64,000 nucleotides of DNA from Bugula neritina. Lineage: Eukaryota > Animalia > Bryozoa. The position numbers and the translations under genes were made by a program. Location of the stretch: assembly GCA_964035545.1 (NCBI GenBank), contig OZ037768.1, positions 16,165,875 to 16,229,874 of the forward strand, written 5' to 3'. The notes under the pieces were generated by a model that was not told where the DNA came from, did no database searches, and saw only the letters and a list, made by a program, of their open reading frames with translations. Below are positions 14,701 to 28,729 of the stretch, in pieces; positions within the stretch are counted from its first letter, which is position 1; every line of letters starts with the position of its first letter.

Positions 14701-17700
14701 CTGTAATAAACTATAAATTAATTTCAATTGCTATAGTAATTTTTTATTATTTGTTTCTAACATAAAAGTAAAGACAACTTTCTTATCTGGTAAAGCAGTT
14801 ATACAGAAATTCCCGATAGCTTCCGGTTTATTCTATACTGTGTGATGTGTCGCTGTATTAGGCTACGTGGTACATCACTAGTTTATAGGCACAGTGTACT
14901 GATGTTTACACACTATAATCTTTAGGTCTCCCTGGAGTTCGCAACGTAGAATACTATGACTGTTGCCCTGACAACCCTTACATTGATATCACATATACAA
15001 TAAAAATCAGAAGGAGAAAACTCTACTACATTGTCAACATTGTTACACCATGTCTTATGCTGGCTGCCTTAACACTGGTGACTTTTACTATTCCACCAGA
15101 TGCTGGAGAAAAAATCTCTTTTGGTAATTATACATAATTCACAAATTTCTGCCTGTAAATCCCAAGTTTATTATTCAAGAAAATTCTGGTATATATGTTT
15201 TTTTTAAATTCTATATTTGGTTGGGTTGTTTATAAGCTTTTGCCTCAAATAGATGAATGATATAACATGATATAATTATATAATATAATATTTTCCATAA
15301 ATAATGAGTTAAATTCTTAAACTACAGTAATATATTTGATAGTTTAATATTGTTAAAGTTAATTATTCATTTTTATGGTAATTTACAGAGCTCCTTTTGG
15401 AATGTTAACAACTGAGCATAGTGAATAGCTGCTAGTCTGTGTATAAAATATATTATATGTATTTGTGTAATCAGCTCCTACTCTTATAATGCACAGGCTA
15501 TAGTGAAACACTATTGAAATATCAATAAACTATATTTTGTCTGACAATTATTGCTTTATAAGATACTTTAAGTTACAACTTTTAATATTATATAATTCAT
15601 ACATGTGAACTGTAAATCATAATTGTAATTATATTTGTAACATATTTTGCTTTATGCAAATCAAAATTAGTAAAGAAAATTATTTATATTATTATATACT
15701 CAACATCTGTTTAATTTGTGAAGTTCATATATTCTGTATAAACAACCCCACATCACTATATCACAGGTGTTACCATTCTTCTGTCTCTCACCGTCTTCCT
15801 TCTGATGGTAGCTGAAGCTCTTCCTGCCTCTTCAGATGCTGTCCCACTCATTGGTAAGTCAGCAAACACAGGCTATACCGAGTCAGTGTAACACAGGCTA
15901 TACTAAGTCAGTGTAACACAGGCTATACTGAGTCAGTGTAACACAGGCTATGCTAAGTCAGTGTAACACAGGCTATACTAAGTCAGTGTAACACAGGAAT
16001 ATTAAGATCGGTTATATCATATATTATATGTGCAGCTACAGACAGGGGGGGAGGGGGTGGATTAAATTGACGTTAATAAATTCTAGAACTTTTACTAATT
16101 GGTAAAGTTGAATTTTGTTGTTTATTTGCAGCTCTATACTTTAGTGCTGTCATGTTGCTAAATGCTGCCTCTGTTGTGTTTACTGTCCTTGTACTCAACT
16201 ACCATCACAGAACATCTGAAACTCATGAGATGCCCAGATGGGTGAGTAGTGGTTATGTACTGTGTATAGTACAGAGTATACTAGTGATTGCTGCACTAAA
16301 GAAAGTGGTTATTTACATAAAACTTTGTAGTAATCTTGGAAATCATTTGAATTGACTATCATTATATTGCTTAAGCCAAAGTTTGCAAATAACTTCTGCA
16401 AACTTTATAAAACTTTTTTAATTGTTTCATAAAGCCAGTAAAATGTAAATATTGCACAGCTAATCTTCTAATGTTGGTTGACAATACTAATGAAATAGCA
16501 ACCCTTAAATTGGTTATATAAGGTAAAATAGATGGTTTCGGAATTCACTATTAATTAATACCAGGAGAGCACAAGCATGCCAAATCTGTCGTTACAATAC
16601 TCAGTTTTAATTTCTAATTATTTATTTAGTATTTAAAATAGAGAGATTAATTTAAAGAGTGGACAGTTCATTGTATCATAGAATTCACAAAAATAATAAA
16701 ATTCCAACTCTTCATGTGATTTGACTGGCTTGCTGAGATTTAGTTTCATATTACTATTTCAACTTATGAATGACAATTTACTAGTACCTATTCTCTCGAT
16801 GTATCAGTATATGGTATTGGTTTAAAAGGCACTGAGGATTAAGTGACAAAGAGCTTTATTTCATATAACATCAATCAAACTAATAAATGGTTGATTATAT
16901 TTACTATACTATTGAAGAAAACTACTAACACATGACTCTAACCTTTTTGCGCTATTTTGCTGTCACTAGTTGCTATACTGGATTAGAAGAAGAGATGACT
17001 GGATCAGTATTATAAATAAATCCTAATACTGATACCAAAATGTTTTAGAAATTAATAGCCAGTTGATGTAAGCAAGTTTCTTAAGGTTGATTGGTAAATT
17101 GCAGTTTTCAGAAATAAAAGTATAAACTCTAAGAAAAGATTTAGCTAAAATATGCAGTACAACCAATTTAAACATGCATAAAATAGCTATAGCAGTGTTT
17201 TAATAGCTACATCAAGTGCTATATTTGATCATAGATATAATTATTGCCAAAGTTTCACCGTTCTTTTATGACTCTGCTTTAGCTGAACAACTGCCATAAG
17301 ACTTCTGTGTTATCAACTACATGTTTCATGTCTTTAAAACAATCTATTTCTAATGACAAGATACAAACACAGTGCATAATTCTCAATTAACAGGTCATGA
17401 ATGCAAGCTGCATTTGTGTCATTTTTAACAAAAACTGTTTAGAAAGTCTTGCAGTCATTTCAGATAAAAGCCTAAAATGCAGAAGACCCTAAATAAGTGT
17501 ATACAAACTCCTTTCTGCCTCCATTATAAATAGTAGCGGAGTACCAGACTGTTCAATATGAAAACCTCATTCTATCCAAAAGCTTTTCGGACCAATAAAA
17601 TCAGAAGCTAGATATTTTGAACCAGATGCTTGCTTAAACCATGTACTCAAAACAACTTTCATGGAACCATTAGAATTCAAATTTAATAAAAGCTGTTCAA

Positions 17701-19014
17701 AGGTTAATTATAATTCTGCCACTGCACTGATTATTGCACATACAATGTGATAATTAAAGCATTGATATCTGACTTTATCATTATGTTTTAAAAGGTCAAG
17801 AAAGGCATTTGTGAATGGCTGGCATGGATATTGCGGTTAGAGCGGCCAGGACATAAGTTCAACTCTAGAGCCTTATGCTCTGGAAGGAACTCGGCAGATG
17901 ATATGGAGATGAATGACGTGAATTGTAAGGGTTTGCTGAATGGTCCAGATGATCATGGAGACTTTAGTCCTAGCTTACCTAGAACTCCTAACATGAATGG
18001 AACTGACTTTACAAAGCATAAGGTAGTCAGCTAACAAATGTTCTTTTATACCTATGGCTATTATATTAGTCTACAATATATATGTATAATTTTCCACATT
18101 TAAAATCCTGTGTGTGTGTGTGTGTGTGTGTGTGTGTGTGTGTGTGTGTGTGTGTGTGTGTGTGTGTGTGTGTGTGTGTGTGTGTGTGTGTGTGTGTGTG
18201 TGTGTGTGTGTGTGTGTGTGTGTGTGTGTGTGTGTGTGTGTGTGTGTGTGTGTGTGTGTGTGTGTGTGTGTGTGTGTGTGTGTGTGTGTGTGTGTGTGTG
18301 TGTGTGTGTGTGTGTGTGTGTGTGTGTGTGTGTGTGTGTGTGTGTGTGTGTGTGTGTGGCTGTGTGTGTGTGTGTGGCTGTGTGCGTGTGTGTAACATAT
18401 CATATTGCCATCATAAACCTCACCTAAATATATTGATAGCAGTAATTGCCCATATTTCGTTTTATAATATCGTATAGAAATATAAAATTATGTCTAAAGA
18501 TGAGTCACTTTCAAACAGCTAGGTTCTTTCCTCATGTTAAGTATTAGAATTCTGTAAATAAACTAAAAAGAAAGACCAATATTAACATATTGAATGAATT
18601 GTATCTCATTATTTCTCTAAAGTCTAGCTGGTTTAAAAATGCGAGTTTAAAATGGATAAGTTGGACAAAATTAGGACTGGTACATTCAACATTTAAAAGG
18701 ATGCCAATGTTGACACCTGTTTAGCACTTGCTTTCTGTATAATATACTTGTAGCTGCGTATTGATGCACGGAGTATCACCAGTGACTTCAGTCCTACGAG
18801 GTATGAGCTCAGATCCATACTGAAAGAGCTGAAGTTTATCACGGACAAGATGAAGGCTCAAGATGAAGATGATCAGATCACAAGTGACTGGAAGTTTGCT
18901 GGAACCGTCATCGATAGATTTCTTCTCTGGTTTTTTGCCATTGCAACAATTCTAGCGTCTGTAGCCATACTTCTGGCTGCTCCAGAAATGTTCAGTGATA
19001 CTGAAGCTCTGTAA
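11791..19014 (+). CDS. nAChR alpha subunit A, alpha7-like, ~495 aa; exons 11791-11839, 12060-12199, 12886-12930, 13326-13435, 14343-14602, 14926-15123, 15767-15853, 16132-16241, 17795-18022, 18754-19014
   Basis: Signal peptide [21 protein letters not shown]; loop [11 protein letters not shown]; Cys-loop [15 protein letters not shown]; loop B FGSWTYDG; loop [11 protein letters not shown]; M2 [23 protein letters not shown]; pre-M4 [12 protein letters not shown]. Exon sizes 140/45/110/87/110 match the CHRNA7 pattern and all phases join. Confidence 0.93.
12942..13176. repeat. Imperfect (CA)n microsatellite, intron 3 of A
   Basis: Directly visible. Confidence 0.95.
15866..15990. repeat. 25-bp minisatellite x5 (ACACAGGCTATACTAAGTCAGTGTA), intron 7 of A
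   Basis: Directly visible; the homologous array in gene B has 3 copies. Confidence 0.95.
18109..18392. repeat. (TG)n microsatellite, intron 9 of A
   Basis: Directly visible. Confidence 0.98.
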
Positions 19015-27900: not shown

Positions 27901-28729
27901 AATAAAAGTGAGGATTGATTCAAATTTCAATAGATTAATCGAGGAGATAATTCCTTAATTTGTAAAATATTAAACAAGTCAACAAGCTGACAATAACTAA
28001 GCAGGAGTGAGACACAAATAAAGTATATGATTTTTATAATATTCCGGTAACAACTATGCAATCATATCTTACAATACTCTTGTAACAGGTAAAGAAAGGA
28101 ATATGTGAGTGGTTGGCCTGGATTCTAAAAATGAAACGCCCTGGCCACAAACTTAAACCAAAATTTTGGTGTGCGCAGTGCGAAAAGAGTTCGGAGGGAA
28201 CCGATAGTAACTGCAAGCAGCTGCTAAATGAAGAGTTAGAAGTGTTTTCATTTGATCCTCCTCTCCCGGGACCCAATCAGTATACTCGGCGGACTAAAGT
28301 AAGATATATTTGTATAAACAACACAACATATTGCTCTTATACCCACCGGCTATATTAGTTCTCATAATAATATTAAGTAGCTTGAAATTGTCAATCTTTA
28401 TATTAATTTTCACTTTATTCTATAAAGATATTTCAGTGCTTAATTAGGCTACATTTTGGTTTCAGAGAAAACCTGACTACACAACTTCAAATGATTGTAC
28501 GCACTCTAGATGTGAACTACGACTCAGATCAATACTAAAAGAGCTGAAGTTTATCACGGACAAGATGAAGGCTCAAGATGAAGATGATCAGATCACAAGT
28601 GACTGGAAGTTTGCTGGAACCGTCATCGATAGATTTCTTCTCTGGTTTTTTGCCATTGCAACAGTTCTGGCGTCTGTAGCCATACTTCTGGCTGCTCCAA
28701 CCATGTTTAGTCACACGGAATCTTTGTAA
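21995..28729 (+). CDS. nAChR alpha subunit B, alpha7-like, close paralog of A, ~489 aa; exons 21995-22040, 23105-23244, 23467-23511, 24285-24394, 25159-25418, 25667-25864, 26476-26562, 26781-26890, 28089-28298, 28466-28729
   Basis: Signal peptide [19 protein letters not shown]; same motifs ([44 protein letters not shown]) and same exon sizes and phases as A; TAA at 28727-28729. Confidence 0.93.
23805..24022 (+). mobile_element. Complete tRNA-derived SINE (~218 bp) in intron 3 of gene B
   Basis: A-box-like TGGTCTAGGGG (23815-23825), B-box GGTTCAAAC (23857-23865), T7 run near the 3' end, 14-bp target-site duplication AGATGTTATG(C/T)TAT at 23791-23804 and 24023-24036. Two more copies in the window. 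Confidence 0.85.
25912..26269. repeat. (TG)n microsatellite, intron 6 of B
   Basis: Directly visible. Confidence 0.98.
26575..26649. repeat. 25-bp minisatellite x3, intron 7 of B
   Basis: Same unit and intron position as 15866-15990. Confidence 0.95.
26918..27018. repeat. (TA)n microsatellite, intron 8 of B
   Basis: Directly visible. Confidence 0.98.
27236..27280 (+). ncRNA. Minimal type I hammerhead ribozyme motif with G12>A substitution (probably inactive), intron 8 of gene B
   Basis: CTGTG (stem I) - CTGATGA - GGGG ACAAA TCCC (stem II) - AAAA in place of GAAA - CAG CTG CTG (stem III) - TC (GUC site) - CACAG (stem I'). All three stems pair. Confidence 0.65.

What the first reader, a model, noticed from the sequence alone, without database searches (positions are those of the whole stretch)
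14926..28729. Patchwork homogenisation of nAChR paralogs A and B: shared pore, divergent N-terminal domain and cytoplasmic loop
Seen, counted by eye: the M2 exons (15767-15853 vs 26476-26562) are identical over 87 nt and the M3 exons differ at 1 of 110 nt (synonymous). The intron between them and ~70 nt of the upstream intron are alignable and share a 25-bp minisatellite. The loop C tract (14940-15040 vs 25681-25781) differs at 1 of 101 nt. The MA/M4 tract contains 126 identical nt (18823-18948 in A). In contrast, exons 2, 4 and 5 carry many synonymous and amino-acid changes, the cytoplasmic loops are barely alignable, and the other introns show no similarity I can see. Purifying selection cannot explain identity at silent and intronic sites. 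Inference: recurrent, domain-restricted gene conversion keeps pore, loop C and assembly helices the same while the loop E/F region and regulatory loop diversify. That would give interchangeable subunits for mixed pentamers.
Basis: partly seen in the sequence, partly recalled or inferred. Interest (0 to 1): 0.82.

Follow-up and report, generated by a model that had tools for sequence, protein, structure and literature searches.

The report
Gene-conversion mosaic in tandem nAChR genes
Two old, neighbouring acetylcholine-receptor subunit genes have recently copied short stretches into one another (loop C, the pore/M3 block with its intron, the last helices); this is a clean but ordinary case of gene conversion, and related species show the same copying at the pore exon.

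Summary
Genes A (exons 2-10, 12060-19014) and B (23105-28729) are intact alpha-type nAChR subunit genes in a tandem cluster of at least five. Silent sites are saturated in exons 2, 4, 5 and 9 (pS 0.89). They are nearly identical in four patches: 14940-15040, 15084-15123, 15716-16251 (M2 exon, all of intron 7, M3 exon) and 18808-18984. Pooled pS in the patches is 0.05 (Fisher p 4e-49).

K-mer depths of independently built contigs from the probable source run fit two true copies, so a polishing artefact is unlikely. No third donor exists in the genome.

Best reading: non-allelic gene conversion between adjacent paralogs, confined to islands of leftover homology.

All A/B patches have one age (K about 0.05-0.07), so this genome alone does not show recurrence. 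Three related species do: their paralog pairs differ at 0-4 of 84 nt in the M2 exon and are saturated or clearly more diverged elsewhere. One pair shares polymorphism.

The M2 peptide is invariant even where no conversion occurs, so conversion is not needed to keep the pore identical. The idea of interchangeable subunits is untested. This is a new member of a known kind, of moderate interest.

The parts
12060..19014 (+). Gene A, alpha-type nAChR subunit, exons 2-10: 12060-12199, 12886-12930, 13326-13435, 14343-14602, 14926-15123, 15767-15853, 16132-16241, 17795-18022, 18754-19014 (stop). Exon 1 not located.
   Evidence: All exons have AG/GT borders and there is one open frame. Spliced RNA contigs of run X18 show the joints of exons 5-6-7-8-9 at these positions. 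Pfam Neur_chan_LBD and Neur_chan_memb match. The best solved relatives are nAChR beta-2 and alpha-7.
23105..28729 (+). Gene B, alpha-type nAChR subunit, exons 2-10: 23105-23244, 23467-23511, 24285-24394, 25159-25418, 25667-25864, 26476-26562, 26781-26890, 28089-28298, 28466-28729 (stop).
   Evidence: All exons have AG/GT borders, one open frame, and the same exon sizes as A except exons 9 and 10. Pfam matches. Expression was not examined.
14940..15040 (+). Patch 1a (loop C, beta10, start of M1); partner in B 25681-25781; 1 difference (14990).
   Evidence: pS 0.053, pN 0.
15041..15083 (+). Divergent island inside exon 6 (M1); partner 25782-25824; 12 differences in 43 nt.
   Evidence: pS 0.57.
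15084..15123 (+). Patch 1b (end of M1 and the M1-M2 linker); partner 25825-25864; 1 difference (15116).
15716..16251 (+). Patch 2: last 51 nt of intron 6, M2 exon, whole intron 7, M3 exon, first 10 nt of intron 8; partner 26425-26900.
   Evidence: the exons differ at 1 of 197 nt, intron 7 at 17 of 218 plus an indel, and the intron 6 end at 2 of 51. Similarity is lost abruptly on both sides.
15865..15997 (+). 25-bp minisatellite in intron 7 of A (5.3 copies). The copy in B is 26574-26656 (3.3 copies) with the same consensus.
   Evidence: The unit also occurs on other contigs of the genome.
18808..18984 (+). Patch 3 (MA helix and M4); partner 28523-28699; 4 differences; 18823-18948 identical.
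   Evidence: pS 0.074, one amino-acid change (I/V). A and B share derived residues here against four relatives.
33670..39710 (+). Gene C, the next nAChR paralog in the cluster. It takes no part in the homogenisation.
   Evidence: Identity to A and B is 55-73% in exons 4-8, and 62% in the M2 exon.

Best explanation
A and B are old tandem duplicates in the same orientation, about 4 kb apart, that encode alpha-type nicotinic receptor subunits. Non-allelic (interlocus) gene conversion has recently overwritten short stretches of one copy with the other: 101, 40, about 536 and 177 bp.

The patches sit where the two genes still had enough sequence similarity to pair, namely the strongly conserved loop C/M1, M2, M3 and MA/M4 coding stretches. 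They also sit where the copied sequence changes few or no amino acids, so selection tolerates them. Once a stretch is identical it pairs more easily, so homogenisation tends to repeat there (inferred).

The ligand-binding exons 2, 4 and 5 and the cytoplasmic loop are too diverged to pair, or conversions there are removed by selection. They go on diverging.

Shown: the mosaic, its significance, two real copies in the reads, the absence of a third donor, and parallel homogenisation of the M2 exon in related species.

Inferred: the homology-island mechanism, the neutrality of the patches, and the direction of copying (a weak hint of A to B).
For: - **Silent-site contrast.** pS is 0.05 in the patches against 0.89 in exons 2/4/5/9.
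- **Alternation.** At least four identical patches alternate with divergent stretches, including a divergent island inside exon 6. A single crossover cannot produce that.
- **Intron included.** Intron 7 and the intron ends lie inside patch 2, so the constraint is not a coding one.
- **Permutation test.** 0 of 100000 permutations reached the observed run.
- **No third donor.** The own-genome search finds only A and B sharing these stretches. The next M2-M3 relative is 78% identical, and there is no donor for B's divergent exons. Among 25 M2-like exons of the genome only A and B are identical; the other pairs with 1-2 amino-acid differences differ at 11-22 nt.
- **Two real copies in the reads.** Logan contigs of run X1 break at the patch borders. 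Their depths are 137-139 in unique sequence against 176, 188 and 240 in shared pieces. My expectation for two real copies, allowing for the A/B differences inside each piece, is 174, 172 and 235. A contig with B's flank enters patch 1a.
- **Silent sites are free between species.** M2 third-position identity between A/B and relatives with the same peptide is 0.29-0.57. The sp2 gene is polymorphic at 3-4 of 84 M2 sites.
- **Parallel cases.**
  - sp2: L022 gene against L024 gene, tandem by contig overlap. M2 exon 0-4 differences of 84 with shared variants, against exon 5 86-88 of 258, exon 6 53-57 of 195 and exon 8 28-29 of 108.
  - sp3: L016 against L013, 2 of 84 in M2 against 65 of 258 in exon 5.
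  - sp1: tandem g1/g2, 1 of 84 in M2, with exon 4 saturated.
  - The M2 DNA tree groups by species.
- **Shared derived residues.** A and B share residues inside patches that relatives lack: EYY before the CC pair, LKELK, AGTV.
Against: - The protein tree of the unconverted exons does not resolve whether A and B are older than the splits from the other species. A+B as sisters gets 58/72 support, and no alternative is rejected by the AU test. The classic 'unconverted exons group by paralog' half of the test is therefore missing.
- There is no GC3 rise in the converted exons, so no sign of GC-biased conversion.
- The other species' pairs come from metagenome contigs of unnamed animals. That both genes of a pair lie in one genome is inferred from co-occurrence in the same samples and from contig overlaps.
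- No long read spanning both loci was examined.
Confidence: 0.75

Rival explanations
1. Conversion is the mechanism, but its restriction to the pore, loop C and the assembly helices is kept by selection, because A and B co-assemble and need identical modules while the ligand-binding and regulatory parts diversify.
For: The same M2 exon is homogenised in four species. Patches 1a and 3 made amino-acid sequences identical where the sp2 paralogs differ by several residues, and A and B share derived residues there.
Against: The M2 peptide is identical in relatives without conversion, so identity at protein level needs no conversion. The loop C and MA/M4 patches are not converted in the other species' pairs (exon 6 identity 0.72). 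Earlier notes report the same kind of exon-scale mosaic in many unrelated families of this genome (unchecked). Co-expression and co-assembly of A and B are unknown.
Confidence: 0.15
2. The identical stretches are an assembly or polishing artefact: reads of one copy were used to correct the other.
For: Identical stretches of 87-126 nt in paralogs 10.7 kb apart are places where short-read polishing can mislead.
Against: K-mer depth in contigs built independently from run X1 is about 1.3-1.75 times the unique depth in the shared pieces. It matches the expectation for two real copies to within a few percent, except one piece that lies about 9% above it, and both A and B flanks join the shared stretch. 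Patch 2 keeps scattered differences and a different minisatellite copy number, which a collapse would not leave. Polishing cannot turn sequence about 70% identical into identical sequence, because such reads do not cross-map. The same pattern appears in independent assemblies of other species.
Confidence: 0.03
3. Selection on the RNA or DNA sequence itself (an editing-site duplex, splicing enhancers, codon choice) preserves silent and nearby intronic sites in these exons, without any copying.
For: Channel exons in some invertebrates carry conserved editing structures that involve introns (general knowledge, not tested here).
Against: Silent sites of the same exons are saturated between species and against other paralogs with the same peptide. 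The M2 exon is polymorphic in sp2. The whole of intron 7, including a minisatellite, is shared.
Confidence: 0.02
4. B (or A) is a chimera made by unequal crossing-over or by a recent partial re-duplication, not by conversion.
For: Tandem same-strand paralogs are a substrate for unequal crossing-over. All patches have a similar age.
Against: One crossover gives one switch point, and here there are at least eight switches. Gene number and exon structure are intact. No extra partial copies turned up in the own-genome searches.
Confidence: 0.05

Closest known systems
Interlocus (non-allelic) gene conversion between tandem duplicates giving exon-scale concerted evolution, as reviewed for many gene families (PMC3966226, PMC3924837) and for long-lasting mammalian gene pairs (PMC2720389)
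   Same: Short tracts, higher similarity between paralogs than between orthologues in the tract, silent and intronic sites homogenised, and neighbouring genes in the same orientation.
   Different: Nothing in the mechanism differs. The case is in a bryozoan-like genome and in a pentameric ligand-gated channel family. The M2 exon recurs as the target in several species.
Tandem arrays of expanded nAChR genes in lophotrochozoans (Jiao et al. 2019, PMC6896357)
   Same: A cluster of several nAChR genes on one strand, made by stepwise tandem duplication. Intron-rich genes (A, B, C) and intron-poor genes (D, E) lie side by side.
   Different: That paper describes duplication and retroposition. The words 'gene conversion' and 'concerted' do not occur in it. 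Here the paralogs exchange sequence after duplication.
Other exon-scale conversion mosaics noted in this same genome by this scan (FReD-ZP, BCL11, ABCA, ALDH2, RING paralogs)
   Same: Old neighbouring paralogs with exon-sized identical stretches amid diverged sequence.
   Different: A different gene family. Those notes are AI notes that I did not check.

Membership tests
Cys-loop pentameric ligand-gated ion channel, nicotinic acetylcholine receptor alpha-type subunit | Neurotransmitter-gated channel ligand-binding domain and transmembrane region | tested here: met
   PF02931 matches exon 5 of A and B at E 5e-25 and 4e-23. PF02932 matches exon 10 at E 5e-11 and 2e-11. The best solved relatives are all nAChR subunits: beta-2 and alpha-7, E 2e-22.
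Cys-loop pentameric ligand-gated ion channel, nicotinic acetylcholine receptor alpha-type subunit | Cys-loop with two cysteines 13 residues apart | tested here: met
   [15 protein letters not shown] is present in exon 5 of both genes (translation).
Cys-loop pentameric ligand-gated ion channel, nicotinic acetylcholine receptor alpha-type subunit | Vicinal cysteine pair in loop C (alpha-type) | tested here: met
   [10 protein letters not shown] is present in exon 6 of both genes.
Cys-loop pentameric ligand-gated ion channel, nicotinic acetylcholine receptor alpha-type subunit | Gating by acetylcholine and cation conductance | not testable with these tools
   Only the sequence motif GEKISFG before M2 and a glutamate after M2 (MVAEALP) are seen. 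These are typical of cation-selective members (established knowledge).
Interlocus gene conversion / concerted evolution | Silent-site divergence much lower in bounded tracts than in the rest of the paralogs | tested here: met
   pS 0.05 against 0.89, Fisher p 4e-49. Permutation test 0 of 100000.
Interlocus gene conversion / concerted evolution | Non-coding sequence inside the tract is homogenised too | tested here: met
   Intron 7 is 92% identical over 218 columns and the intron 6 end matches at 49 of 51, whereas the other introns cannot be aligned.
Interlocus gene conversion / concerted evolution | Converted parts group by species, unconverted parts by paralog | tested here: inconclusive
   The first half is met: M2 exon differences are 0-4 within the pairs of four species against 12-26 between them, and the tree groups by species. 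The second half is unresolved: the protein tree of exons 2-6 gives no supported order inside the A/B group, and the AU tests reject nothing. Synteny suggests the pair is old: an A-like gene followed by a B-like gene in sp2, and an A/B-like gene followed by a C-like gene in L016 and L033.
Interlocus gene conversion / concerted evolution | Polymorphism shared between the paralogs (ongoing exchange) | tested here: met
   Met in sp2. The four variable M2 sites carry the same variants in both genes, and L028 (A-like gene) equals L022 (B-like gene) from the same sample. Not tested in the window's own species.
Interlocus gene conversion / concerted evolution | GC-biased repair signature (frequent but not defining) | tested here: not met
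   GC3 of the converted exons (0.39-0.42) is no higher than that of the unconverted exons.

The most novel reading that the evidence does not exclude
The M2 (pore) exon of this nAChR pair has been kept in concerted evolution for a long time, across several speciation events. Selection on something beyond the peptide would maintain this. One possibility is matched RNA-level features or co-translational assembly of subunits that must pair. That would make it a conversion hot spot with a function, not a neutral by-product.
Probability: 0.1. Interest if true: 0.6.

Novelty: new member of a known kind. Interest (0 to 1): 0.4.

Why it matters
The case gives a well-delimited natural example of how short conversion tracts shape a neurotransmitter-receptor gene pair: the transmembrane core and loop C are homogenised while the rest of the ligand-binding domain and the cytoplasmic loop diverge freely.

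Practical consequences:
- Trees, dN/dS scans and orthology calls for nAChR families in lophotrochozoans will be misled if such mosaics are not masked. The M2-M3 exons would date the duplication as recent, while exons 2-5 show it is old.
- The recurrence at the M2 exon in four taxa, together with the many similar mosaics noted elsewhere in this genome, suggests that bryozoan genomes may be a good system for measuring how little homology a conversion tract needs.

It does not by itself reveal a new mechanism or a new receptor property.

Tried and rejected
- **Read laying.** It was repeated on 14300-18100, so patch 3 was not covered by reads.
- **Sibling-lineage test.** Runs X5 and X18 carry an A-like gene diverged by about 0.16 at silent sites. 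They gave only the A-like copy, so I could not ask whether A' and B' are homogenised there as well. Counts inside the patches (A/B 3 silent differences against at least 6 for A/A') hint that the patches are younger than that split, but the difference is not significant.
- **Protein trees.** Trees of the unconverted exons were too short (122-213 columns) to resolve orthology.
- **Third donor.** Looked for; none was found. One search was swamped by a 250-bp repeat and was repeated on a narrower stretch.
- **GC-biased conversion.** No signal.
- **Intron against exon divergence inside patch 2.** The intron is at 7.8% and exon silent sites at about 2-5%. I considered this as evidence of repeated events, but the difference is not significant (p 0.51).
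- **cDNA-mediated exchange.** Considered because exon identity is higher than intron identity. Rejected because the introns are retained and intron 7 is itself homogenised.
- **Literature.** Three searches found no report of gene conversion in nAChR or Cys-loop families. The library is partial.
- **Earlier notes.** The search of earlier findings by place (near) and by words gave nothing.
- **Not done.** The big protein search was not used, as the operators advised. Exons were searched one by one by reference, and the joined CDS was used only inside local scripts for dN/dS. Exon 1 of A and B was not located.

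
Full report
**What is there**

The window (contig 4 of a 216-Mb genome, 33% G+C) carries a same-strand cluster of at least five nicotinic-receptor-like genes. I built exon models for the first two.

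- All nine exons of each model have AG/GT borders and give a single open frame.
- Exon sizes are the same in A and B except for exons 9 and 10.
- Spliced RNA contigs of a public run show the joints of A's exons 5-6-7-8-9 exactly where they are placed.
- Exon by exon, both genes match the Pfam ligand-binding and transmembrane families. Their best solved relatives are nAChR beta-2 and alpha-7.
- Both genes have the 13-residue Cys-loop, the vicinal cysteines of alpha-type subunits (YYDCC) and the GEK motif before M2.
- Exon 1 was not found.
Exons were searched by reference, and the joined CDS was used only in local scripts.

| Feature | A coordinates | Result |
|---|---|---|
| M2 exons | 15767-15853 | 87 of 87 identical |
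| M3 exons | 16132-16241 | 1 of 110 differs, synonymous |
| Loop C stretch | 14940-15040 | 1 of 101 differs |
| MA/M4 | 18823-18948 | 126 identical nt |
| Intron 7 | 15854-16131 | alignable end to end; shared 25-bp minisatellite, 5.3 copies in A and 3.3 in B |
| End of intron 6 | 15716-15766 | about 51 nt alignable |

Nei-Gojobori counts:

| Region | pS | pN |
|---|---|---|
| Exons 2, 4, 5 and 9 | 0.82-1.03 (saturated) | 0.17-0.36 |
| Four patches, pooled | 0.05 (6 of 120 sites) | 0.0025 |

The four patches are 14940-15040, 15084-15123, 15716-16251 and 18808-18984. The contrast in silent sites is overwhelming (Fisher p 4e-49).

A permutation test in the manner of Sawyer, on a ten-gene alignment of exons 4-8, gave a longest A/B concordant run of 63 variable sites. 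None of 100000 permutations reached it.

The patches alternate with divergent stretches. One is a 43-nt island inside exon 6 with 12 differences. That gives at least eight switch points.

**It is not an artefact**

Contigs that Logan built independently from the probable source run (X1) break at the patch borders, as a k-mer graph must do at a two-copy repeat. One contig carrying B's upstream flank runs into patch 1a.

| X1 contig | Observed depth | Expected for two real copies |
|---|---|---|
| Unique sequence | 137-139 | (one-copy baseline) |
| 14940-15125 | 176 | 174 |
| 15715-15910 | 188 | 172 |
| 16114-16251 | 240 | 235 |

The expected values come from counting which 31-mers of each contig are shared by A and B as assembled. 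If B really differed inside the patches, these contigs would sit at single-copy depth.

Patch 2 also keeps 20 scattered differences and a different minisatellite copy number. A collapse would have erased those.

**It is not constraint on silent sites**

- The 28-residue M2 peptide is identical in eight related genes, but their DNA differs from A/B at 14-22 of 84 positions. Third-position identity is 0.29-0.57.
- In this genome, 25 M2-like exons were found and only A and B are identical. Other pairs with 1-2 amino-acid differences differ at 11-22 nt.
- One relative's M2 exon is polymorphic at 3-4 of 84 sites among samples.

**No third party is involved**

Own-genome searches with the patches and with B's divergent exons found nothing closer than A and B are to each other. 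The next M2-M3 relative, on contig 5, is 78% identical.

**What it is**

The pattern is the signature of non-allelic gene conversion between adjacent paralogs:
- short, sharply bounded tracts;
- silent and intronic sites homogenised;
- many switch points.

Single crossovers and partial re-duplication do not give alternating patches with intact gene structure.

**How old, and is it recurrent?**

Silent divergence is 0.05 in the exonic parts of the patches and 0.07 in the intronic parts, and these are not different (p 0.51). The A/B mosaic can therefore be explained by one episode of a few events. Recurrence does not follow from this genome alone.

A sibling lineage seen in runs X5 and X18 carries an A-like gene with about 0.16 silent divergence. 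Nine of the ten listed exon 5 changes are at third positions. Inside the patches A differs from that lineage at 6 or more silent sites, but from B at 3. This suggests the patches are younger than that split, but the counts are too small to prove it.

**Evidence from relatives**

A word search with exon 6, and a scan of metagenome contigs, brought in 24 loci with the same exon structure from unnamed animals. Three further paralog pairs could be placed in single genomes.

| Pair | Basis for one genome | M2 exon differences (of 84) | Other exons |
|---|---|---|---|
| sp2: A-like gene (L024-L028) and B-like gene (L014, L021-L023) | co-occur in four samples; tandem, since the 3' end of L024 overlaps the 5' end of L023 | 0-4 | exon 5 86-88 of 258; exon 6 53-57 of 195; exon 8 28-29 of 108 |
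| sp3: L016 and L013/L019 | same sample | 2 | exon 5 65 of 258 |
| sp1: two tandem genes | L018 continues L020 by a 55-nt overlap | 1 | exon 4 saturated |

In sp2 the variants at the four variable M2 sites are shared between the two genes, and one allele pair from the same sample is identical. The sp2 tract ends at the exon borders, where homology ends.

The M2 DNA tree groups by species, and in sp2 the two genes are intermingled. Homogenisation of the M2 exon is therefore recurrent in this subfamily, and it is ongoing in at least one species.

The other half of the classic test failed for lack of signal. Protein trees of the unconverted exons do not resolve the order inside the A/B group. Synteny suggests the pair is old: an A-like gene followed by a B-like gene in sp2, and an A/B-like gene followed by a C-like gene in L016 and L033.

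**Why these stretches?**

My reading is that tract placement follows residual homology and tolerance. The converted stretches are the most conserved coding parts. The tracts stop where similarity stops. Conversion there changes few or no residues.

Conversion is not needed to keep the pore identical, because purifying selection already does that in genes that do not convert.

Patches 1a and 3 did make amino-acid sequences identical, and A and B share derived residues there (EYY before CC; LKELK; AGTV). These two patches are not converted in the other species' pairs, so they look incidental.

Earlier notes of this scan list many similar exon-scale mosaics in unrelated families of the same genome, and call it the bryozoan Bugula neritina (unchecked). 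If right, the nAChR case is one instance of a genome-wide habit and not a receptor-specific design.

I give the adaptive version about 0.15.

**Direction of copying**

This is unresolved. The shared M3 exon is closer to A-like genes of other species (2-3 residues differ) than to the B-like gene of sp2 (5 residues differ). That is a weak hint that A was the donor.

**Novelty**

Gene conversion between tandem duplicates is textbook knowledge (PMC3966226, PMC3924837, PMC2720389). I found no report of it for nAChR or Cys-loop families in three library searches, and the main paper on lophotrochozoan nAChR expansion does not mention it.

Verdict: this is a new member of a known kind, of moderate interest. 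Its main value is as a caution for phylogenetics of these families, and as a clean system for studying the homology limits of conversion.

Noticed in passing
window 27030-27280 (intron 8 of B): A repeat of about 250 bp with copies 98-99% identical on all large contigs of the genome, some in tandem arrays with a period of about 271 bp. It looks like a young, high-copy element or satellite.
   Followed up: partly
window about 23794-24027 (intron 3 of B): A dispersed repeat of about 220 bp, with more than 40 copies at 86-88% identity across the genome (SINE- or MITE-like).
   Followed up: no
window 15865-15997 and 26574-26656; also G000 C7:294340-294595, C2:26487955-26488516, C5:16329397-16329511: The 25-bp minisatellite of intron 7 belongs to a family found at several other places in the genome at 74-82% identity.
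   Followed up: partly
window 25912-26269 (GT)n and 26918-27018 (TA)n: In B, patch 2 is bracketed by two long dinucleotide arrays. The (TA)n array starts 18 nt after the downstream end of the patch. A has no array at the matching places, but has (CA)n at 12942-13176 and (TG)n at 18109-18393 in other introns.
   Followed up: no
window 13712-13900 and 16601-16786: An inverted pair, 81% identical, in introns 4 and 8 of gene A. It appears as an 'opposite strands' joint in a contig of run X1.
   Followed up: no
window 14300-18100, runs X5 and X18: Runs filed under the same organism label, and a biofilm metatranscriptome, carry an A-like gene about 4% diverged overall and about 0.16 at silent sites. 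This is a sibling lineage or cryptic species under the same name.
   Followed up: partly
window 14990, run X1: The only X1 contig over this site carries B's base (A instead of C) but continues into A-type sequence at 15041-15125. It is either bubble popping by the assembler or a polymorphic conversion in the sample.
   Followed up: no
window 46077-51316 and 55609-63807 (genes D and E): The last two nAChR-like genes of the cluster have long fused exons (open frames of 330 and 303 residues). Intron-rich and intron-poor members therefore lie side by side. A further M2-like exon lies just beyond the window at C4:16237196.
   Followed up: no
L024/L023, L016, L033 (metagenome contigs): Gene order is conserved in other species. 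An A-like gene is followed about 5 kb downstream by a B-like gene (sp2). In L016 and L033 an A/B-like gene is followed by a C-like gene that has the same 3-residue insertion in exon 2 as window gene C.
   Followed up: partly
window 20738-21266: A 15-bp minisatellite of 35 copies in the spacer between genes A and B.
   Followed up: no
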